From positions 76,818,001 to 76,882,000 of the forward strand of contig NC_043008.1 in the NCBI RefSeq assembly GCF_006345805.1: a stretch of 64,000 nucleotides of DNA, read 5' to 3'. The notes beneath the pieces were generated by a model. The model saw nothing but the letters and a program-made list of their open reading frames with translations, searched no databases and was not told where the DNA came from. Source of the DNA: Octopus sinensis. Its lineage: Eukaryota. Below, piece by piece: positions 35,740 through 54,309 of the stretch; position 1 is the stretch's first letter, and each line of letters starts with the position of its first letter. The position numbers and the translations under genes were made by a program.

Positions 35740-36430
35740 TCTTTGTATATTACAGAATTGCTAAAGATTCGTTCGCAGTACCTCACGAAGTACGACCTAA
35801 CTACATCCAAAGCTTCATTAATAGATAAAGATAGTTTTTTTGTTTGCACATTTTCCTAGCACCTGAAATAAACCTACTTTATACGGTATCTTCTGTAATT
35901 TAGGAATCTAAAAAACAAAATAGGATAACCATATTCTTCTCTTGCCCTTTGAAACCACTCAACTTTTCCACCTTATTAACATCAAAGCCAAAGTTACTTA
36001 CTCCTCCTATCTCATAACCTAATACCCTTGTATAATATTTTTTATAAATAAAAACAAATTCTCAGATTATTTATCCACTAATACTATAACAAACTTAACG
36101 TGCAACTCTCTAGTGTATTCCTTAACCTCAAATTTACTTAAAGCTGATGGGTTTATTATCAAACTGTACAGCCTTCTAATAACGTCTCAGCAACACGCTT
36201 ATTCTGATCTACCAGTTTTGAAATTCCTCTAGTCTAATCATATTCTTGAGACTTCCCTATATCTCGTATTTTTTATCATAATTCTTTTCAGTTTCTCGTT
36301 TTTAATAATATTTAAATTTCCAGTATACACATTATGGCAGAATTCGGACTTATTGAAATTACTCATTCCTAAATAAATGCCCTTGAAACTTTCTAGGTTA
36401 GCCTCCGATAAAAACGTATTGCAGTTAAAT
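35740..36430 (-). mobile_element. Penelope-like element N-terminal RT fragment
   Basis: SEFCHNVYTGNLNIIKNEKLKRIM..RYRE and LHVKFVIVLVDK motifs. Confidence 0.6.
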
Positions 36431-37814: not shown

Positions 37815-38590
37815 CAGGGTGCGGCGAATAAACTGTCGTCTCAAATACGCAAAAATGGAAATAACACTGACATCTCATTTTAACAGATATATCTACCAAA
37901 CTTACATAACAATATCTTGATATACTAAAGAGTAAATTTTTCAATAAAATCGCCACTAGCTTCAACCACGTCCTCCAGACGAATTCGAAATTGCCTGCAG
38001 CTCTTCTGGCCGGTCTCCTTGTTTAAATTGGGGAATGCTGCTATAATCTTTGCCTTCAGTTCAACTTTGGTGTTACAAGGAGTTTTGTTGGTTTCTCGCT
38101 CAACTGCATGCTACACATAATAATCAATTGGAGTTGCAGTCTGGGGATTTCGGTGGCCAGATTTTATGGTGCAGAGTTGCCAAACATAGGGTCTTCCAGC
38201 AGCCAATCTCTTGACCCAGGGCAGCACTACCTCCTCCAGAGACTTGAAGTAATCCACCGTGCTGAACTTGAGGCCGTGTAAGAAGATGAATGGAGGCATA
38301 AATTCGCCATCACTCCAAACAGCATGATATTGACTAGGTGTTTGATTTCTATCACTCTCGGTATACCCAAGCATTCGGAAATGTTCGTATTGGAGCTTCT
38401 GGCGCGAATGCCAAGCAGTACAGCATGTCGTTTCCAAATTTCTAACAAAGTCATTTGTGTCATGGTGCTGTTTTTCTCATAGACGGTACCCAACTAACCC
38501 TTCTATACTGGGTAGCCGACAAAATCAAATACAAACAATGCACATGCGTGAAATTAAAAACATAATATCGCAACAATTTACGCATCGCAT
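37815..38590 (-). mobile_element. Tc1/mariner relic, DDxD (maT/DD37D-like), internally deleted
   Basis: TA followed by cagggtgcggcgaataaactg terminus; PWVKRLAAGRPYVWQ, WPPKSPDCN, IDYYV, ETNKTPCNTK. The opposite terminus is degenerate. Confidence 0.7.
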
Positions 38591-38597
38591 ATATATA

Positions 38598-38635
<38 letters not shown>

Positions 38636-38841
38636 TATATATATGTTAAGAGAAAAACAATTAGTTTTAAATCTCTGAGCGAGAAGTAGTAGCAGTATTA
38701 TAGTAAGTTCTATTTGCCAACGTAAAGTGGCAGTCCTGGTTAGGACGATGTTACTATGCTTTTTTAGCGCCAGGAAAACATCTACTGTGTCCTTATACCT
38801 CGAACAAGGGAGCTAATGTCCCAACTCACTAATAAATGGTA

Positions 38842-38887
38842 CCTGCGGACCACTGGTTTCTGGGTGACTTCCCATCATCGGTACAGG
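38842..38887 (-). ncRNA. type I hammerhead ribozyme (U4C core variant)
   Basis: CCTGTA-CCGATGA-TGGGaagtcaCCCA-GAAA-CC-agt-G-GTC-CGCAGG on the minus strand. Confidence 0.7.
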
Positions 38888-39167
38888 ATAACCACTGGTT
38901 TGAGATGGCAGCAGTAGGCCTTGCTCGAGGGATATACTTTTAAAGTGACACTGTCACTGATCTCCCAAGGAGAAAAACAATTAGTTTTAAATCTCTGAGC
39001 GAGAAGTAGTAGCAGTACTACATAGTAAATTTTATTTGTCAGCGTGACGTGGCAGTCCTAATTAGGATGATGTTACTACCTTTTTTAGTCCCGGGAAAAC
39101 ATCTTTTCCAGCTGGCTATCTACGCACAACTGCGTCCTTATACCTCGAACAAGGGAATTAAACGGCA

Positions 39168-39213
39168 CCTGCGGACCACTGGTTTCTGGGTGACTTCCCA
39201 TCATCGGCACGGG
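39168..39213 (-). ncRNA. type I hammerhead ribozyme (U4C core variant), second tandem copy
   Basis: CCCGTG-CCGATGA-TGGGaagtcaCCCA-GAAA-CC-agt-G-GTC-CGCAGG on the minus strand. Confidence 0.7.
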
Positions 39214-39378
39214 ATACCCGTTGGTGTAAGTATGCAGTTGTGCGTCGATAGCTTGTTGGAAAAGAAGTTTTCTTGCGGCTAAAAAAGGTAGTGACATCGT
39301 CTTAATCAGGACTGATACTTCGCGTTAGCAAATAGAATTTACTTTGTAGTACTGTTACTACTTACTTCTCACTACTTA

Positions 39379-40599
39379 CGGGGGTTAGACAAAATAATGG
39401 AAACACCTAGCATCATAGCATCATAATTTTGACATATCTATAAAACCGTCAAAAACTTGTTTATTTTTATGTTTTTTTTTTTACTTATTATTAGAGTTGC
39501 TTAATATGTTTTGCTAAAATTGCTGTTTCTTATCAGATATCATCAGAAAAAGGTAATTAAAATTCATTAAAATGATAGATTTATCGAACTTTCAAAGAGG
39601 TCAAATTGTTGGCGCTCGTATTGCAGGCGCTAGCGTAACGAAAGCAGCTGAAATGTTTGGTGTATCAAGAAATACTGTCTCGAAAGTAATGACAGCCTTT
39701 GAGAAAGAGGGAAAAACCTCCTTGTCAAAACAAAACTTCGGAAGAAAACCAAAACTTTCAGATAAGGACCGTCGGACTCTTATGCACATTATTAGAAAGG
39801 ATCACAAAAGTACAGCTCTCAAAATTACTGCAGAGCTTAATGACCATCTCGAGAACCCAGTTTCCACAAGAACTGTTCGCCAGGAGCTGCACAAAGCCGG
39901 ATTTCAAAAACAAACGTTTCAAAGCGTTTAGAGTGGAGTAAAAACCTACAGAAATCGTCCCTAGAGCTGTGGAAGAATGTTATTTTCTCGGACGATTCAT
40001 CCTTTACCTTAATTCCGACCACCGGCTGAGTATATGTGTGGAGACAGCCATAAAACGCATTTGACCCAGACTGCTTTCTTCCAACTGTTAAACATGGAGG
40101 AGGGTCTGTGATGAGCAGGAGGGCTATACCTTGTAAATGGCTTCCCTTCATGGTAGAATTAATAGTCAGTACTATTTAAGCATTTTATCTTATAAAATGG
40201 GTGCAGAATTGCTTCCGGAAGGAAACGCAAACTTTCAAGATGATAATGCACCAATTCACACAGCTAAAGTTGTTACTGAATGGCACGAGGAACATTCTAG
40301 TGAAGTTGAATATCTTATTTGGCCACCATAGGTCCAAGATCTGAATATTATTGAACATTTGTGGTACATTTAAAAAAAACAAGTAAGGTGTCGATATTCT
40401 CCACCATCATCACTACAAGAACTGGAGACTTTTTTAGCTGAAGAATGGACAAAAATTCCTCTGGAAACCATTCAAACTTTGTACGTGTCCGTACCTCGTA
40501 GAATTCAAACTGTAATTACTGCCAAAGGTGATCCTTACTCATATTAAAATAAATTTGTTTGAAATTTTAAGGTGTTTCTATTATTTTGTCGAGCCCCTG
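39379..40599 (+). mobile_element. Tc1-type transposon, DD36E (Incomer-like), inactive
   Basis: TA TSDs at 39377-39378 and 40600-40601; 29-bp imperfect TIRs. Transposase MIDLSNFQRGQIVGAR.., FSDDSSF, FQDDNAPIH-(36 aa)-E. Contains a deletion and stops. Confidence 0.9.
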
Positions 40600-40644
40600 T
40601 ACCTCGAGCAAGGCCTAGTATTGCCATCTCAAGCCAACGGTTAT

Positions 40645-40690
40645 CCTGTGCCGATGAAGAGATATAACACAGAAAACATTGGTCCATAGG
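40645..40690 (+). ncRNA. degenerate third hammerhead of the 38.6-kb family
   Basis: CCTGTG-CCGATGA..GAAA..GTC-CATAGG: stem I intact (6 bp), stems II and III eroded. Confidence 0.45.
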
Positions 40691-40892
40691 TACCGTTTAA
40701 GTAAAGCCTTCGATAAGGTCGACCATCGATACTGGCAGCTGTTCTCAAGGCTGCCGGTTTCGGTTCAGTCTTCCGTGGTGGATCGCTGCTTTGTACAGCA
40801 ACATCTGCTCGGGGATACGGGTGAACGGTCACCTTTCGGAGCCGTTTGACATCTCGCGTTCGGTTCGCCAATGATGCCCTCTCTCCTCCCTC

Positions 40893-42137
40893 TTGTACGT
40901 ATTGACTCTCGAGCCATTACTGCGCAAGTTGGAGGCTTTGAGGGGTATCCTGCGCGATCTAGGAGGTGGAAACAGCGTGTCTGCCTATGCCGACGACGTC
41001 ACCGTGATGGTGTCGAGCCACAGGCACATTGACCTGATTGACGAGACACTAAGCGAGTACGAAGCGGTGACAGGGGCAAAGATTAACGCGGAAAAGGCCG
41101 TGGGCTTGCAACTGGGCACCTGGAGAGGCAAGTCCATGCCGTCCAACAGTGTCGTAGGGCGCTCGACAGACGGACCCGTTAAACTGCTCGGTGTCTGGTT
41201 CGGTCCAGACCTCCAGGTGGATAAAAACTGGGAAGAGGTGACGAATCTCACCCAGAAATGGGCCGAGAGGAAGCTGTCCCTGAAAAGTCGAGCGGAGATG
41301 GCGAATGCGTACATCGCATCCGTTATCTATTACCGATTGACCGTCGTCCCTTGTCCCGACCGCTGGTTGGCCAAGCTGGTGCGCTTGCTCTTCGACTTCT
41401 TGTGGAAGAGTCAGGTACCACTGGTCAGGCGATCCATCTGCTGTCAACGGCCGCTGAACGGAGGCCTTGGCATGCCGTGGTTACTGATGCGCAAACATGC
41501 GCTCAGGCTACGGCATCTCAAGTGTTTCGTAGACGGTGAACAGGTGTGGTCATCTTTTGTCAGACGCGACTTTCCGCAGCTCGTCTCTTTGACAGAGTTG
41601 CAGTCTTGGATCAAATGCCGACCGAGAAAGGGCGCTTGGCACCTCGAGTGCCGTCAAGCTCTCTCTGCCCTCCACCAGGCGGGCAATGCGATCGGTAGTG
41701 GTTCCACTCTAGCGTTCTATAGCGGTTTAGTGGAAGAAAAGTGCGACGACGTTCTCGGGGAAACTCTAGGTGTTGACGATAACGAGCTAAACAGTCTGTT
41801 CGGGAGAACTTTCGGGCCGATGCCAATGGATAATTTCCAAAGGGCTCTCGCCTGGCAGTGCTACCGAGGGGCTCTGCCTGTTCGGGATAAACTCTACCGG
41901 CACGGAAGTGCCGTCAGACGGGCCTGCCCGAGGTGCGCCCAGGACGACGAAACCGTTCTGAACGCACTCGTCCAGTGCCCGAGTATTTCTGAACTATGGG
42001 TTTATGTCGAACAGCTACTGTCACGTATAGGATGGATCCGGCTATCAGCTGAATCCATAGTGAGGATTGCCCCGCCGACCTCCTTTAACCGGGAGGGCAA
42101 AACAGTTTTCCTTTGCCTAGTGGCTGTAGCGATATAG
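40893..42137 (+). pseudogene. open remnant of LINE ORF2 (RT C-terminal half plus zinc-binding domain, 414 aa)
   Basis: Longest ORF in the track; contains SAYADDVTV. The upstream RT is broken by a stop and frameshifts. Confidence 0.8.
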
Positions 42138-42339
42138 GTGATATGGTGGACCCGTTTGAAAGGGCTAAGGTCAGACACTTTCCTCTTTGGCCAAGGCTTC
42201 ATCAACTTTTTCAAGTTTCACTTGAAAAGGAAGATGAGAGTAGAGAGGGAAGTGATGTCTGGTAGCAAGTTTATTGAAAGTTGGGTGAATGTCACAAGAA
42301 TGGCCAGTATGAACGGACCAATTCTGAGGATACACCTTT

Positions 42340-42567
42340 CTCTTTTATCTCTTTTACTTTTACTTGTTTCAGTCATTTGACTGCGGCCATGCTGGAGCAC
42401 TGCCTTTTAGTCGGGCAAATCGACCCCGGGACTTATTCTTTGTAAGCCCAGTACTTATTCTATTGGTCTCTTTTGCCGAACCGCTAAGTGACGGGGACGT
42501 AAACACACCAGCATCGGTTGTCAAGCAATGCTAGGGGGACAAACACAGACACACAAACACATACACT

Positions 42568-42636
<69 letters not shown>

Positions 42637-42802
42637 CATATATACGACAGGCTTCTTTCAGTTTCCCTCTACCAAATCCACTCACAAGGCATTGGTCGGC
42701 CCGGGGCTATAGCAGAAGACACTTGCCCAAGATGCCACGCAGTGGGACTGAACCCGGAACCATGTGGTTGGTTAGCAAGCTACTTACCACACAGCCACTC
42801 CG
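42340..42802 (-). mobile_element. SINE family A, full length with internal microsatellite
   Basis: Head ggagtggctgtgtggtaag..gggttcagtccc..ttgggcaagtg (CORE-like motif); tail cagtcaaatgactgaaacaag followed by (taaaag)n. Confidence 0.85.
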
Positions 42803-46409: not shown

Positions 46410-46946
<537 letters not shown>

Positions 46947-46974: not shown

Positions 46975-47256
46975 TCACCGTGACCGACCAGGTTATCAGA
47001 TGTTGCTACACATCGCTGGTCACGATGCGCTTCGCATTGTTTTAGCCTTCAAATGACGCCACCCCACTATCTAAGCGAGCAGGCCAACAGAAGAAAGAGT
47101 GAAAGTTGTGGCGAAAGAGTACAGCAGGGATCGCCATCACTCCCTGCAGGAGCCTTGTTGAGCTTTAGGTGTTTTCGCTCAATAAACATTCACAACGCCC
47201 GGTCTGGAAATCGAAACCGCGAGTCCGCTGCCCTAACCACTGGGCCATTGCGCCTC

Positions 47257-47257
<1 letters not shown>
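46975..47257 (-). mobile_element. SINE family B variant (same head, different tail)
   Basis: Head and centre match 33331-33505 apart from a short internal deletion; the 3' part is unrelated to 33510-33711. Confidence 0.8.
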
Positions 47258-47287
<30 letters not shown>

Positions 47288-49350: not shown

Positions 49351-49357
<7 letters not shown>

Positions 49358-49895
49358 AAAGGGCTTAGTAAAATAAATTACTTTGTCGCATACTGAACTC
49401 ATTAGAAATAGCAGCTAAAAAAACTTTTTTAAAGCTATTTCTAATACTTAAAGAAAACCTCTCTCATATAGTGTTTGCTCAACTCAAGGGGAGAACAGAA
49501 ATTCTTCGCTTGCATTTTTGAGTTTGCTGGCACTGTTAGTTTCGAGCAGATCTTCAGAAGCGATAAGAAGCCGAAAGGGTATGCTCCCACTTTCAGTGTT
49601 TTCAAATCCAAACCAGGGAGTTCTGAGCTGATGATAGAAATGTCGAGTTTGACTAATCTTGAAACGTACGTTCTCAAATAACCTTTGCATTTGATTTTTT
49701 AATGTCTCTACCCCCATACTTTCGTGAGTTGAGTTGAGTTGAGTTGAGTTGAGTTGAGTTGAGTTGAGCAAACACTATATGAGAGAGGTTTTCTTTAAGT
49801 ATTAGAAATAGCTTTAAAAAAGTTTTTTTAGCTGCTATTTCTAATGAGTTCAGTATGCGGCAAAGTAATTTATTTTACTAAGCCCTTTTATATAA
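49351..49895. repeat. fold-back element with 137-bp arms and (GAGTT)n at the inner junction
   Basis: 49351-49487 is the reverse complement of 49759-49895 (one mismatch seen). (GAGTT)n spans 49725-49768. Confidence 0.85.
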
Positions 49896-49983
49896 TGTAA
49901 TAATTTGAATTCGCCTTAATTGGTCCCTTTGCATACTGAATACTTGGTGAAATTGATTAATTAATTAATTTTACCCTCAATTG

Positions 49984-50019: not shown

Positions 50020-50245
50020 CTTTACTGCCCACAAAGGGCTAAACATAGAGGGGACAAACAAGGACAGACAAAGGGATTAAGTCGATTACATCGACCCTAG
50101 TGCGTAACTGGTACTTTATTTATCGACCCCGAAAGGATGAAAGGCAAAGTCAACCTCGGCGGAATATGAACTCAGAACGTAACGGCAGACGAAATACGGC
50201 TACGCATTTCACCCGGCGTGCTAACGTTTCTGCCAGCTCACCGCT
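50018..50245 (-). mobile_element. SINE family C, full length
   Basis: Minus strand: gcggtgagctggcagaaacgttagc..gagttcatattcc..gactttgcctttcatcctttcggggtcgataaataaagtaccag. Confidence 0.8.
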
Positions 50246-50325
50246 GGCAGAAATTATATATATTGTATATATAAATATATAATTATATATATTGTTTATA
50301 TGTATATATATATTATATATATATA

Positions 50326-50356
<31 letters not shown>

Positions 50357-50428
50357 ATACATATATATATATGTATATATATATGTGTGTGTGTGAGTGT
50401 GTATATATATACATGTATATATATGTAC

Positions 50429-51180
50429 TTTTTTTTTATCTAGTTTCAGCTCACGAGCTGTGGCCATGCTGGGGCGCCGCCATTTGGTGTTGCTACATGA
50501 TTTTACTTCATGAATACTTTTTAGCATTTGCATTAGGTGCATGAGAGAGTTCGATGCAGCTGCCCTCATCTGCACCTCCTGCCGTGAAGTTGGTTCATCT
50601 GGGACACCTGATAGGAAGAAATCCAGTTTTATTTTAAAGACATCTGCATCCACCCCATGCAGGTCTCTCAGGTTCTTCGGGAGGATATTGAAGAACTGTG
50701 GGCTTCTGAAGCCCAGGCTATCACAGTATCTTGTCCTACATCTTGATGGCAAATTTGGAGTCCTTGGCACTATGCAGTGGCGCCCAGTTCTAGCATTTGT
50801 GTAATTCTCGATGCCAAAGTTTGGGACAAGTCCTTCTAGGATCTTCCAGATGTATATTATGGCATATCTTTCTCGCCTACGCTCTAAGGAATAGAGTCTT
50901 AATCTCTTGAGTCTTTCCCAGTAGCTTATATGCTGCACAGAGGCTATCTTCTTCGTGTAGCTTCGTTGGATCGTCTCAAGTTCTGTAATTAACTTGACAC
51001 TGGATGGTGACCATAGCTGAGAGCAATAGTCAAAGTGGCTTAGGACAAGTGTCCTCCAGAGGACCATCATGGTATCTTGTTCTCTTGTTCTAAATGTTCT
51101 AAGAATCCATCCTGCCAGCCGCCTACATTTCATTGCCAATTTAGCAACATGCACATGAAAGGTTGCATCATCACTCATGT
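50429..51180 (-). mobile_element. CR1/L2-like LINE 3' end
   Basis: GWILRTFRTR..LSHFDYCSQLWSP..LETIQRSYTK..YWERLKRL.LYSLERRRERY. The tail is ccagcatggccacagctcgtgagctgaaac followed by an A run. Confidence 0.9.
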
Positions 51181-53750: not shown

Positions 53751-53766
53751 ATAAAAATTTGCTAAC

Positions 53767-53839
53767 AGACTCCAGGGGATTCGAACCCTCGACCTCCAGT
53801 TTACTAAATTGGCGCTCTAACCAACTGAGCTATGGAGCC
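53767..53839 (-). tRNA. trnT: tRNA-Thr(AGT) gene or pseudogene
   Basis: GGCTCCA/TGGAGTC acceptor stem, GCTC/GAGC D-stem, loop TTAGTAA, TTCGAAT T-loop, and a T5 terminator about 9 nt downstream. It has one anticodon-stem mismatch and a 1-nt deletion in the T-stem. Confidence 0.8.
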
Positions 53840-54309
53840 ACCTTATGTATGCATGTATTCTGCATTTTCATGTGTTTGTGTGTTCGTATTTCTGTTTTAT
53901 GTGTGTGGGAATGTGTATGTGTGTGTGTGTATTTGCTATCTACCTCTGTCTCCTTGTGTGTGCATGCCTGAGTGTGTCTGTGTATGACTTTTTGTGGCTA
54001 TGTATGTGCGTCTGTTATGTATGGATGTGTTTCTCCGTATGTATCCTTGTGTGAAGTGTGCGTTTGTATATATGGTCATGTGTTTCAGTCTTCATTTGCG
54101 TATGTATGTGTGTAAGTGTGTGTGTGCTTGTCTGTCCATATTACCTATGTACATATCTATCTGTTTACATTCATATCCATTTACCTACATATACATTTAT
54201 ACACCCACACACACACACACACACACATACGTCTACATAGCCTATTATCTACCTGTGTATATATATATATATAACAGTGGGTTTTGGAGTATGACTACCT
54301 AATACGTAT

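What the first reader, a model, noticed from the sequence alone, without database searches (positions are those of the whole stretch)
38645..40700. Tandem hammerhead units predicted to release a 326-nt non-coding RNA monomer (retrozyme-like)
Seen in sequence: a ~326-bp unit is repeated head-to-tail. Each copy carries on the minus strand a complete hammerhead fold (38842-38887, 39168-39213): 4-bp stem II TGGG/CCCA, 3-bp stem III ACC/GGT, a GUC triplet and a stem I of about 5 bp. The core is CCGAUGA rather than CUGAUGA. The predicted cuts are 326 nt apart. The array then flips orientation (39220-39370) and, after a Tc1 inserted at a TA, continues with a third eroded hammerhead (40645-40690) whose stem I stays paired through different bases (CCTGTG/CATAGG). 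There is no coding capacity. Established: tandem hammerheads that release unit-length RNAs, which can circularise, define retrozymes and PLE pLTRs. Inference: this is a non-autonomous ribozyme retroelement, possibly an undescribed family.
Basis: partly seen in the sequence, partly recalled or inferred. Interest (0 to 1): 0.85.

Follow-up and report, generated by a model that had tools for sequence, protein, structure and literature searches.

The report
Decayed hammerhead retrozyme repeat in cephalopod DNA
This is a real but old and broken copy of a small non-coding mobile repeat that encodes a self-cutting hammerhead RNA, a kind of element already known in animals, here in an octopus-like genome and with a mutated catalytic core.

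Summary
Two head-to-tail units on the minus strand (38645-39222) each carry a type I hammerhead-shaped motif at exactly the stated coordinates, and the predicted cuts are 326 nt apart. An inverted partial unit follows. It is split by a Tc1-like transposon and abuts a 5'-truncated LINE. All three motifs have CCGAUGA (U4C), so they fail the field's canonical descriptor.

Rfam finds no hammerhead here. It also misses two canonical-core relatives in the same window, so that negative says little. A covariance model I built from four published, experimentally active animal retrozyme hammerheads ranks the two sites first and second in the 64 kb. Its third hit (46739-46777) lies in a homologous 354-bp unit 8 kb away. 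That unit has a canonical CUGAUGA core and compensatory changes in stems I and III.

The tandem-plus-inverted layout and the ends next to TA/CA microsatellites match Penelope-like-element integration.

Verdict: a new family member of a known class (metazoan non-LTR retrozymes, which are PLE-derived repeats), in a probable octopod genome. This locus is most likely a dead relic. Cleavage, circular RNA and copy number remain untested.

The parts
38589..38644 (.). (AT)n microsatellite abutting the 3' end (sense orientation) of unit A; probable insertion target
   Evidence: TRF. 6.9% of window positions lie within 10 bp of such a block.
38645..38969 (-). Repeat unit A (325 bp)
   Evidence: Direct-repeat families D1-D5; BLASTN; MAFFT alignment.
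38970..39222 (-). Repeat unit B, 5'-truncated about 9 nt upstream of its hammerhead
38842..38887 (-). Hammerhead motif c1, type I, core CCGAUGA (U4C). Predicted cut between 38848 and 38847. Distal stem I extends the motif to 38832-38901.
   Evidence: Model R1 18.2 bits, E 0.005, top hit in the window; descriptor scan; sequence.
39168..39213 (-). Hammerhead motif c2, core CCGAUGA. Predicted cut between 39174 and 39173.
   Evidence: Model R1 17.1 bits, E 0.011, second hit; descriptor scan.
38848..39173 (-). Predicted 326-nt unit-length RNA released if both hammerheads cut
   Evidence: Cut sites read from the sequence. Linear fold -91.1 kcal/mol, z -2.48. Circular fold -87.5 kcal/mol, 58% paired.
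39223..39376 (+). Inverted, 5'-truncated partial unit C (unit positions about 54-200), joined head-to-head to unit B
   Evidence: Inverted repeat I1, 141 nt, 82% complementary; alignment.
39377..40601 (+). Degenerate Tc1-like DNA transposon with flanking TA dinucleotides. About 60-70 nt of the repeat unit is missing at this junction.
   Evidence: Terminal inverted repeats I6; Pfam HTH_Tnp_Tc3_2 and DDE_3; frames with stop codons.
40602..40700 (+). Piece D of the inverted unit, with the eroded hammerhead c3 (40645-40690; stem I intact, stems II and III broken, core CCGAUGA)
   Evidence: Inverted repeats I2 and I4; alignments; pair counts.
40701..42338 (+). 5'-truncated LINE reverse transcriptase with frameshifts and a premature stop, in the same orientation as piece D and starting at the KAFD motif
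   Evidence: Pfam RVT_1 and zf-RVT; 76% identity to P0001; frames; 3' end.
46592..46945 (+). Element E: one 354-bp unit homologous to A/B, circularly permuted relative to the cut site. Its hammerhead lies at 46736-46780 (cut 46774|46775), with canonical CUGAUGA and a palindromic helix III, ACUGCAGU.
   Evidence: Model R1 16.8 bits, E 0.014, third hit; alignments; sequence.
46513..46591 (-). Inverted 5'-truncated partial copy of E, joined head-to-head and abutting a (CA)n/(TA)n microsatellite
   Evidence: Sequence; alignment; BLASTN self-hits.
49357..49897 (+). Element F: a separate hammerhead-bearing element. Motif at 49622-49678 with CUGAUGA, GUU and palindromic ACGUACGU, lying between 141-bp inverted arms that are 98.6% identical.
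   Evidence: Model R1 13.8 bits; model R2 23.5 bits, E 1.4e-4; BLASTN; sequence.

Best explanation
The locus is an old, rearranged insertion of a short non-coding retroelement of the animal 'non-LTR retrozyme' class, that is hammerhead-bearing repeats derived from or mobilised by Penelope-like elements. The host genome is probably an octopod cephalopod.

**Shown here**
- There are 1.8 head-to-tail units with a 326-bp period on the minus strand, plus an inverted 5'-truncated unit on the plus strand.
- Each unit encodes a type I hammerhead architecture: a 6-bp proximal stem I, an internal loop, a 5-6-bp distal stem I, a 4-bp stem II with a 6-nt loop, a weak 3-bp stem III, and GUC.
- All three local copies have U4C in the core.
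- A homologous 354-bp unit 8 kb away has the canonical core. It differs from the local copies by compensatory changes in stems I and III.
- By eye, that unit also carries a long-range helix at the same place as in the 326-nt unit but with a different sequence.

**Inferred from published work on this class**
1. A multimeric transcript folds two neighbouring hammerheads into a dimer through the near-palindromic helix III.
2. Both sites cut, giving a unit-length RNA with a 5'-OH and a 2',3'-cyclic phosphate.
3. A tRNA ligase of the RtcB type circularises it.
4. The RNA is copied and integrated by a PLE reverse transcriptase/endonuclease at TA/CA microsatellites. This leaves partial tandems with an inverted 5'-truncated copy.

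This locus itself is most likely inactive.
For: **Independent model.** R1 was built only from four experimentally active retrozyme hammerheads (coral, mussel and two from axolotl; supplement of PMC7229834; alignment A1). Across the whole window with filters off, it ranks 38842-38887 and 39168-39213 first and second. Third is 46739-46777, which lies in a unit homologous to the finding's unit.

**Chance.** My descriptor scan gave 2 hits against 0.013 expected per window.

**Covariation.** Over the four related hammerheads, 89.5% of cells are paired, against 22-45% when partners are slid by 1-3 columns. Five pairs change on both sides.

**Dimer-type helix III.** As a hairpin it is worth -0.3 to 0 kcal/mol. 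As an intermolecular duplex it is worth -12.2 to -13.0 kcal/mol in c1, E and F. This matches the dimer-type animal hammerheads described in PMC4209133 and PMC7229834.

**RNA structure outside the ribozyme.**
- A long-range helix appears in the circular minimum-energy folds of both subfamilies at equivalent positions, but with different sequences: CCUUGUUCGAGG/CCUCGAGCAAGG against CCCUUUGCAAAUA/UAUUUGCAUUGGG.
- The hairpin GGAAAA-GAUG-UUUUCC becomes GGAGAA-GACG-UUCUCC.

**Class features.** Unit sizes of 326 and 354 bp fall in the 150-450 bp range. The unit is non-coding. G+C is below 50%.

**PLE-style integration.**
- Partial tandem plus an adjacent inverted 5'-truncated copy occurs at two loci of this family. 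Element F, of a separate hammerhead family, also has inverted arms.
- Element ends abut TA/CA microsatellites although only 6.9% of positions do. Both traits are described for PLEs in PMC8557442.

**Host.** The best named relatives of the adjacent LINE reverse transcriptase are from Argonauta hians and Octopus sinensis.
Against: - All three local motifs carry CCGAUGA. They fail the canonical centre CUGANGA/GAAAY/RUH used in the field (supplement of PMC7229834). U4C is reported to reduce activity considerably in vitro (PMC3088659).
- No Rfam hammerhead family matches, even at E<=10 on 81 nt. The same is true of the canonical-core E and F motifs.
- The hammerhead fold of a single motif is not the minimum-energy fold: -15.4 against -19.5 kcal/mol for c1. 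Fold z-scores of the motifs are weak, at -1.4, +0.1 and -2.2.
- Only four related sequences were available for covariation, and several changes are CpG-type transitions.
- R1 rests on four sequences and its E-values are rough.
- No further copies could be retrieved from any searchable collection. Copy number, consensus and selection are therefore unknown.
- No PLE ORF is present in the window.
- Neither cleavage nor a circular RNA has been shown.
Confidence: 0.75

Rival explanations
1. The repeats are not a separate non-autonomous family. They are solo or truncated pseudo-LTRs left by an autonomous Penelope-like element whose coding part was 5'-truncated away or lies elsewhere. The hammerhead would then serve PLE transcript processing rather than production of a small circular RNA.
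For: PLE pLTRs carry hammerheads. PLE insertions are typically 5'-truncated partial tandems with an inverted upstream copy, and they favour microsatellites (PMC4209133, PMC8557442). That is exactly the layout seen here. The 2026 preprint finds retrozymes and pLTRs phylogenetically intermingled.
Against: No RT/GIY-YIG ORF lies next to any of the three loci, nor among the 27 ORFs of at least 120 aa in the window. Element E is almost exactly one unit long (354 bp) and is bounded by microsatellite. Helices outside the ribozyme appear conserved, which suggests constraint on the whole small RNA.
Confidence: 0.15
2. The same element, but mobilised by LINE machinery. The sense-oriented unit piece D is fused directly to a 5'-truncated LINE in the same orientation. 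This would be a chimeric retrocopy made by template switching of the LINE reverse transcriptase onto a retrozyme RNA.
For: The D/LINE junction at 40698-40701 joins the two in the same orientation, with the LINE truncated inside its reverse-transcriptase domain. Cervera and de la Pena (PMC7229834) class these elements as non-LTR retrozymes.
Against: The junction lies about 18 nt past the predicted cut site, not at an RNA 3' end. Elements E and F have no LINE beside them. A simple nested LINE insertion explains the junction equally well. The microsatellite downstream of the LINE is internal to a SINE, so no shared target site could be shown.
Confidence: 0.05
3. The hammerhead resemblance is a chance or degenerate motif in an ordinary short tandem or inverted repeat with no ribozyme history.
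For: The core deviates from consensus, Rfam is negative, the thermodynamic z-scores are weak, and my descriptor thresholds were fitted after the fact.
Against: The independent model ranks the sites first. A homologous unit has the canonical core and compensatory stem changes. The expected number of relaxed motifs is 0.013 per window. Stem I has the 6-bp stem / internal loop / distal stem layout typical of animal type I hammerheads.
Confidence: 0.05

Closest known systems
Metazoan non-LTR retrozymes (Cervera & de la Pena 2020, PMC7229834), including the ~330/350-bp newt and axolotl 'satellite 2' repeats
   Same: Non-coding tandem repeats of 150-450 bp with G+C below 50%, one type I hammerhead per unit, a weak helix III suited to dimeric action, and a predicted unit-length, well-paired RNA. 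The unit size (326/354 bp) is almost the same as in axolotl (331/353).
   Different: There is no detectable sequence similarity outside the ribozyme architecture. The local copies carry U4C. Only 1.8 direct units are present here, not a long array. Expression, cleavage and circularity are untested. I found no report for cephalopods.
Penelope-like element pseudo-LTRs with hammerheads (Cervera & de la Pena 2014, PMC4209133; Craig et al. 2021, PMC8557442)
   Same: Hammerhead in the repeat; partial tandem plus an inverted 5'-truncated copy; insertion next to TA/CA microsatellites; hammerheads found close together on opposite strands.
   Different: No RT/GIY-YIG ORF lies between or beside the repeats. 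The hammerhead here has the canonical animal layout (6-bp helix I, 4-bp helix II) rather than the 'minimal' PLE variant with a 7-8-bp helix II and no helix III.
Schistosoma Sm-alpha and cave-cricket pDo500 hammerhead satellites
   Same: Repetitive, non-coding DNA of animals that encodes type I hammerheads.
   Different: Sm-alpha is SINE-like with a pol III promoter. ARAGORN found no tRNA-like head in the unit. This comparison rests on my own knowledge and was not tested further.
Natural U4C hammerhead variant of a viroid (Ambros & Flores 1998, as cited in PMC3088659)
   Same: The same core substitution. It is reported to lower in vitro activity considerably while remaining sufficient in vivo.
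   Different: That case is a plant viroid hammerhead in a replicating RNA. Here it is a genomic animal repeat with signs of neutral decay.

Membership tests
Hammerhead ribozyme, type I | Conserved catalytic centre CUGANGA / GAAA(Y) / RUH | tested here: not met
   c1, c2 and c3 read CCGAUGA (C at position 4); GAAAC and GUC are present. The homologous E motif (CUGAUGA, GAAAC, GUC) and the F motif (CUGAUGA, GAAAC, GUU) do meet it.
Hammerhead ribozyme, type I | Three helices around the core, with helix I open and helices II and III closed | tested here: met
   Independent model R1 aligns all helices at the stated coordinates. 89.5% of cells are paired across four relatives, and five pairs change on both sides.
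Hammerhead ribozyme, type I | Match to the curated Rfam hammerhead models | tested here: inconclusive
   No hammerhead hit at the gathering score or at E<=10. The canonical-core E and F motifs are missed as well.
Hammerhead ribozyme, type I | Site-specific self-cleavage after the H17 nucleotide | not testable with these tools
   Needs in vitro transcription of monomer and dimer constructs.
Metazoan non-LTR retrozyme | Head-to-tail repeats of about 150-450 bp, each with one type I hammerhead | tested here: met
   326-bp period with two motifs 326 nt apart. Only 1.8 direct units are present at this locus.
Metazoan non-LTR retrozyme | Non-coding, with no LTRs, primer-binding site or polypurine tract, and low G+C | tested here: met
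   Longest ORF is 77 aa. The ORF spanning hammerhead c2 has no protein relatives. G+C is about 0.40. Primer-binding site and polypurine tract were not searched formally; no LTR-like terminal direct repeats were seen.
Metazoan non-LTR retrozyme | Expressed as unit-length linear and circular RNA | not testable with these tools
   No transcriptome data were available. Only the predicted fold was computed.
Metazoan non-LTR retrozyme | Many genomic copies forming a family | tested here: inconclusive
   There is one homologous unit elsewhere in the window (E). No copies were found in metagenome, prokaryote-genome or viral collections, nor in 64 kb of Argonauta and Octopus sinensis DNA. The source genome itself could not be searched.
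Penelope-like element (as pLTR of an autonomous copy) | Repeats flank an ORF encoding a reverse transcriptase and a GIY-YIG endonuclease | tested here: not met
   The flanks are a microsatellite with a mariner-like remnant on one side and a LINE reverse transcriptase (RVT_1 + zf-RVT) on the other. No GIY-YIG domain occurs in any of the 27 ORFs of at least 120 aa.
Penelope-like element (integration signature) | Partial tandem with an adjacent inverted 5'-truncated copy, and insertion bias for microsatellites | tested here: met
   Head-to-head junctions lie at 39222/39223 and 46591/46592, and F has inverted arms. Ends of A, E and F abut TA/CA runs, against a 6.9% background.

The most novel reading that the evidence does not exclude
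The C4 (U4C) core is not decay but a tolerated natural variant. It is shared by three copies in both orientations that are all about 80% identical to each other, so the source RNA already carried C4 when it was reverse-transcribed. On this reading a C4 subfamily cleaves well enough, as a dimer, to propagate. That would be a first genomic animal example of a functional U4C hammerhead, and a first retrozyme family described in cephalopods.
Probability: 0.12. Interest if true: 0.5.

Novelty: new member of a known kind. Interest (0 to 1): 0.3.

Why it matters
- **Taxonomic reach.** It adds a probable cephalopod family to the catalogue of animal hammerhead retrozymes. I found no paper linking hammerheads to octopus genomes beyond a PLE survey.
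- **Support for the PLE link.** One 64-kb window shows the PLE-style integration signature at three hammerhead loci that lack any PLE ORF: partial tandem, inverted 5'-truncated copy, and microsatellite target. This fits the recent proposal that animal retrozymes are non-autonomous PLE derivatives.
- **Annotation.** Rfam's hammerhead models missed all five motifs in the window, including two with a canonical core. Standard annotation probably undercounts these dimer-type animal hammerheads.
- **Limit.** The locus is probably inert, so its biological weight is modest.

Tried and rejected
1. **Rfam.** I ran it at the gathering score on the whole window, at E<=10 on 2.6 kb, and on 81-101-nt slices. 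There was no hammerhead hit, not even for the canonical E and F motifs. I treat this as uninformative.
2. **Public collection scans.** The pattern GATGAN{12,16}GAAACCAGTGGTCC was scanned against metagenome, prokaryote-genome and viral contigs. All 59 loci were chance matches with no flank similarity.
3. **Protein-database search.** A spurious ORF spanning the hammerhead was used to try to fish out other copies. Nothing was found.
4. **Comparison with published retrozymes.** BLASTN of the unit against the four published retrozyme sequences showed no homology beyond the motif.
5. **Related genomes.** Models R1 and R2 and BLASTN were run on 64 kb of Argonauta hians and Octopus sinensis DNA. No family copies were found.
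6. **Single composite insertion.** I considered that the retrozyme plus LINE went into one (AT)n tract as a single event. I dropped this because the downstream (AC)n(AT)n tract is internal to a SINE.
7. **U4C and an inactive fold.** I considered that U4C stabilises an alternative inactive pairing (ACCG/UGGU). I dropped this because the U4 version folds just as well into an alternative.
8. **R2 hit at 35879-35938.** It has no core and is a chance match.
9. **Supplementary table of the 2026 preprint.** It held only an oligo order form.
10. **Two papers on U4 mutational data.** Neither was held in the library.
Full report
**Observation**

- The repeat finder and BLASTN show two head-to-tail copies, 38645-38969 and 38970-~39225. 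Start-to-start spacings are 320-326 bp in ungapped blocks (one short 33-nt block is offset 345). Identity is 82-98% in those blocks and 75% over 276 gapped columns.
- An inverted partial copy lies at 39223-39363 and is 82% complementary to 39004-39144.
- After a 1.2-kb insert, a further inverted piece lies at 40602-40699.
- The insert has 30-nt terminal inverted repeats and TA on each side. It encodes degenerate Tc1-type domains: HTH_Tnp_Tc3_2 (1.2e-8) and DDE_3 (4.9e-10).
- About 60-70 nt of the unit is missing across this insert, so the junction is not a clean TA insertion into an intact unit.
- No other copy of the unit was found by BLASTN in the window, apart from a 37-nt match near 46.87 kb.

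**The motif**

On the minus strand, 38887->38842 reads CCUGUA CCGAUGA UGGG AAGUCA CCCA GAA ACC AGU GGU C | CGCAGG. The second copy (39213->39168) differs at two positions, both in stem I. The predicted cuts, 38848|38847 and 39174|39173, are 326 nt apart.

After an internal loop (UAU on one side, U on the other) comes a 5-6-bp distal stem, GUGGU/ACCAU. This is the usual layout of animal type I hammerheads: a 6-bp helix I, a 4-bp helix II, and a short helix III (PMC4209133).

The third copy (40645-40690, plus strand) keeps stem I and the same CCGAUGA core, but it has lost stems II and III.

**Is it more than chance?**

A descriptor of my own allowed one core mismatch, stem II of at least 4 bp, stem III of at least 3 bp, and 5 of 6 pairs in stem I. 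It hits only these two sites on both strands of the window. It gave 0.013 hits per 64-kb first-order Markov shuffle (2 of 150), and none with a canonical core. I chose the thresholds after seeing the motif, so this is only moderate evidence.

Rfam gives no hammerhead match at the gathering score, at E<=10 on 2.6 kb, or at E<=10 on 81 nt.

**An independent test**

I took the four retrozyme hammerheads shown to self-cleave in PMC7229834: coral Amil224, mussel Mg353, and axolotl Ax353 and Ax330 (sequences from its supplement). I aligned them (A1) and built covariance model R1 with the textbook structure. None of these sequences resembles the window's unit outside the motif.

I searched the whole window with filters off. 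The ranking was:

| Rank | Coordinates | Strand | Bits | E-value |
|---|---|---|---|---|
| 1 | 38842-38887 | - | 18.2 | 0.005 |
| 2 | 39168-39213 | - | 17.1 | 0.011 |
| 3 | 46739-46777 | + | 16.8 | 0.014 |
| 4 | 49622-49678 | + | 13.8 | 0.12 |

The calibration is short, so the E-values are rough. The ranking is what matters.

**A homologous unit with a canonical core**

The third hit reads GCG CUGAUGA CGGG UCAAUA CCCA GAA ACUGCAGU C | CGUGC. Its surroundings (46513-46945) align with the 38.6-kb unit along the whole length. Shared blocks include ATAGCCAGCTGGARAAGAYGTTYTCC, GGCAAATA, CTCGYTCAGAGATTTA, GATCAGTGAC...GTCACT and AAACCRGTGRTT. This element E consists of one 354-bp unit (46592-46945), circularly permuted relative to the cut site. 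It is preceded head-to-head by a 79-nt inverted partial copy (46513-46591).

The finding's family therefore ancestrally encodes a canonical hammerhead, and the local copies are U4C derivatives.

**Covariation**

On the alignment of the four related motifs (A2), with the hammerhead structure including the distal stem I:
- 89.5% of cells are standard pairs, against 22-45% when the 3' partners are slid by 1-3 columns.
- Five pairs change on both sides. Examples are C-G to G-C in proximal stem I, G-C to A-U and U-A to C-G in distal stem I, and C-G to U-A in stem III.

Four sequences are few, and some of the changes are CpG-type transitions. I rate this as supportive, not conclusive.

Outside the ribozyme, the circular minimum-energy folds of both subfamilies contain a long-range helix. 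It pairs a segment about 20 nt downstream of the cut with one about 70 nt upstream. The two subfamilies use different sequences at aligned positions: CCUUGUUCGAGG/CCUCGAGCAAGG against CCCUUUGCAAAUA/UAUUUGCAUUGGG. By my count, at least six pairs change on both sides. A hairpin, GGAAAA-GAUG-UUUUCC, becomes GGAGAA-GACG-UUCUCC.

Duplex energies against shuffles are only modestly unusual: 9 of 300 and 27 of 300 shuffles did as well. The 326-nt monomer folds with z = -2.48.

**How it probably works**

Helix III is almost worthless as a hairpin (-0.3 kcal/mol in c1, 0 in E and F). As an intermolecular duplex between two copies it is worth -12.2 to -13.0 kcal/mol. For a single motif the hammerhead fold is not the minimum-energy fold: -15.4 against -19.5 kcal/mol.

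This is the behaviour described for newt and axolotl repeats and for PLE hammerheads. Those cleave poorly as monomers and well as dimers in tandem transcripts (PMC4209133, PMC7229834).

From those papers I infer the cycle:
1. A multimeric transcript is made.
2. Neighbouring hammerheads cleave as a dimer.
3. This gives a unit-length RNA with a 5'-OH and a 2',3'-cyclic phosphate.
4. A tRNA ligase of the RtcB type circularises it.
5. The RNA is reverse-transcribed and integrated.

None of these steps is shown here.

**Who mobilises it**

Three features match the integration signature described for Penelope-like elements in PMC8557442:
- partial tandems;
- an inverted 5'-truncated copy at the 5' end (junctions 39222/39223 and 46591/46592);
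- ends that abut TA/CA microsatellites: the 3' end of A at 38645, both ends of E, and the left end of F.

Only 6.9% of window positions lie within 10 bp of such a microsatellite block.

No RT/GIY-YIG ORF lies beside any of the loci or among the 27 ORFs of at least 120 aa, so these copies are non-autonomous. This agrees with the 2026 preprint that derives animal retrozymes from PLE pLTRs.

An alternative is hinted at by piece D. It is fused in sense orientation to a LINE truncated inside its reverse-transcriptase domain, at 40698-40701. That could be a template-switch chimera, but a nested insertion explains it as well. The junction is 18 nt past the cut site.

**State of this locus**

All pairwise identities among A, B, C and D are about 80-82%. 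This fits a single old event followed by independent decay.
- The hammerhead of D differs from c1 at 11 of 46 positions and has lost two helices.
- c2 has two stem I mismatches, and its hammerhead fold is worth only -4.6 kcal/mol.
- The near-identity of c1 and c2 (2 differences in 46) is matched by another 51-nt block at 98% identity. It therefore looks like patchy homogenisation rather than selection on the ribozyme.

U4C is shared by all three copies, so it predates the local duplication. According to PMC3088659 (citing Ambros and Flores 1998), U4C considerably decreases activity in vitro, yet it sufficed in vivo for a viroid.

I conclude that this locus is most likely an inactive relic. At best one 326-nt monomer could be released from a minus-strand transcript.

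**Host**

The best named homologues of the adjacent LINE reverse transcriptase are from Argonauta hians (64% identity) and Octopus sinensis (50%). This points to an octopod cephalopod. From memory, the SINE-like repeats in the window also resemble octopus SINEs; that is a lead only.

I searched 64 kb of A. hians and O. sinensis DNA fetched through these proteins. It contains no copy of the family. One Argonauta site is hammerhead-like, with a UUGAGGA core.

**Comparison with what is known, and novelty**

The class is well described: type I hammerheads in 150-450-bp tandem repeats, expressed as 170-400-nt circular RNAs in cnidarians, molluscs (mussel), amphibians and others (PMC7229834). The link to PLEs is also established.

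The present unit shares the architecture and size, but no sequence, with published examples. A literature search found no description of hammerhead repeats in octopus.

It is therefore a new member of a known kind. The U4C core is the only unusual trait, and decay is its most economical explanation.

**Method note**

Rfam also fails at E<=10 on the canonical-core E and F motifs. The Rfam negative for the finding should therefore not be read as evidence against a hammerhead.

Noticed in passing
window 46513-46945: Element E is a 354-bp unit homologous to the finding's repeat, with a canonical CUGAUGA hammerhead (46736-46780). It is exactly about one unit long and circularly permuted relative to the cut site. 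A 79-nt inverted partial copy precedes it, and the whole sits inside a (CA)n/(TA)n microsatellite. A 38-nt internal duplicate is 100% identical, so E looks younger than the 38.6-kb locus.
   Followed up: yes
window 49357-49897: Element F is a separate hammerhead-like element. Its motif (49622-49678) has CUGAUGA, GAAAC, GUU, a palindromic ACGUACGU helix III and a long helix II. It lies between 141-bp inverted arms that are 98.6% identical and is flanked by TTATATAA-like sequence on both sides. It could be a PLE-style inverted copy or a MITE. Outside the motif it has no similarity to the A/B or E units.
   Followed up: partly
window 40701-42338: A 5'-truncated LINE (RVT_1 + zf-RVT) with frameshifts and a premature stop at 42137. 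It is 76% identical to a JGI protein and 64% to an Argonauta hians protein. It is joined in sense orientation to hammerhead piece D, about 18 nt past the predicted cut site. This could be a template-switch chimera or a nested insertion.
   Followed up: partly
window 39377-40601: A degenerate Tc1-like transposon with many stops and frameshifts and TA/TA flanks. About 60-70 nt of the host repeat unit is missing at the insertion point.
   Followed up: partly
window ~37950-38460, minus strand: A remnant that looks like the C-terminal part of a mariner-type transposase (WPPKSPDCNS.. / ..DYYV). It has stops and frameshifts. Pfam gave no hit for the best frame.
   Followed up: partly
window 42339-42800 (minus); also 47000-47260 and 50020-50200: SINE-like repeats. 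The first carries an internal (AC)n(AT)n microsatellite and directly abuts the end of the LINE. They resemble cephalopod SINEs from memory only.
   Followed up: no
window 53766-53840, minus strand: A tRNA-Thr(AGU) gene or tRNA-derived element (Rfam 51.5 bits; also called by ARAGORN).
   Followed up: no
window 50150-51178, minus strand: A 342-aa ORF that is the C-terminal part of another LINE reverse transcriptase. It reads on through a TA/CA microsatellite (a run of HTHTHTYIYIY...). Pfam gave no hit, and the exact protein is not on record.
   Followed up: partly
L061 18190-18237 (Argonauta hians BAAFZT010000001.1): A hammerhead-like motif with a perfect 6-bp stem I, a UUGAGGA core (U3 with G8) and a 12-nt perfectly palindromic helix III (AUCCGAUCGGAU). 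Model R1 gives 15.2 bits. It may be a hammerhead relic in a related cephalopod.
   Followed up: no
whole window: TA/CA-type microsatellites are very dense: 77 blocks of at least 12 bp in 64 kb. Rfam's hammerhead models missed all five hammerhead-shaped motifs in the window, including the two with a canonical core.
   Followed up: partly
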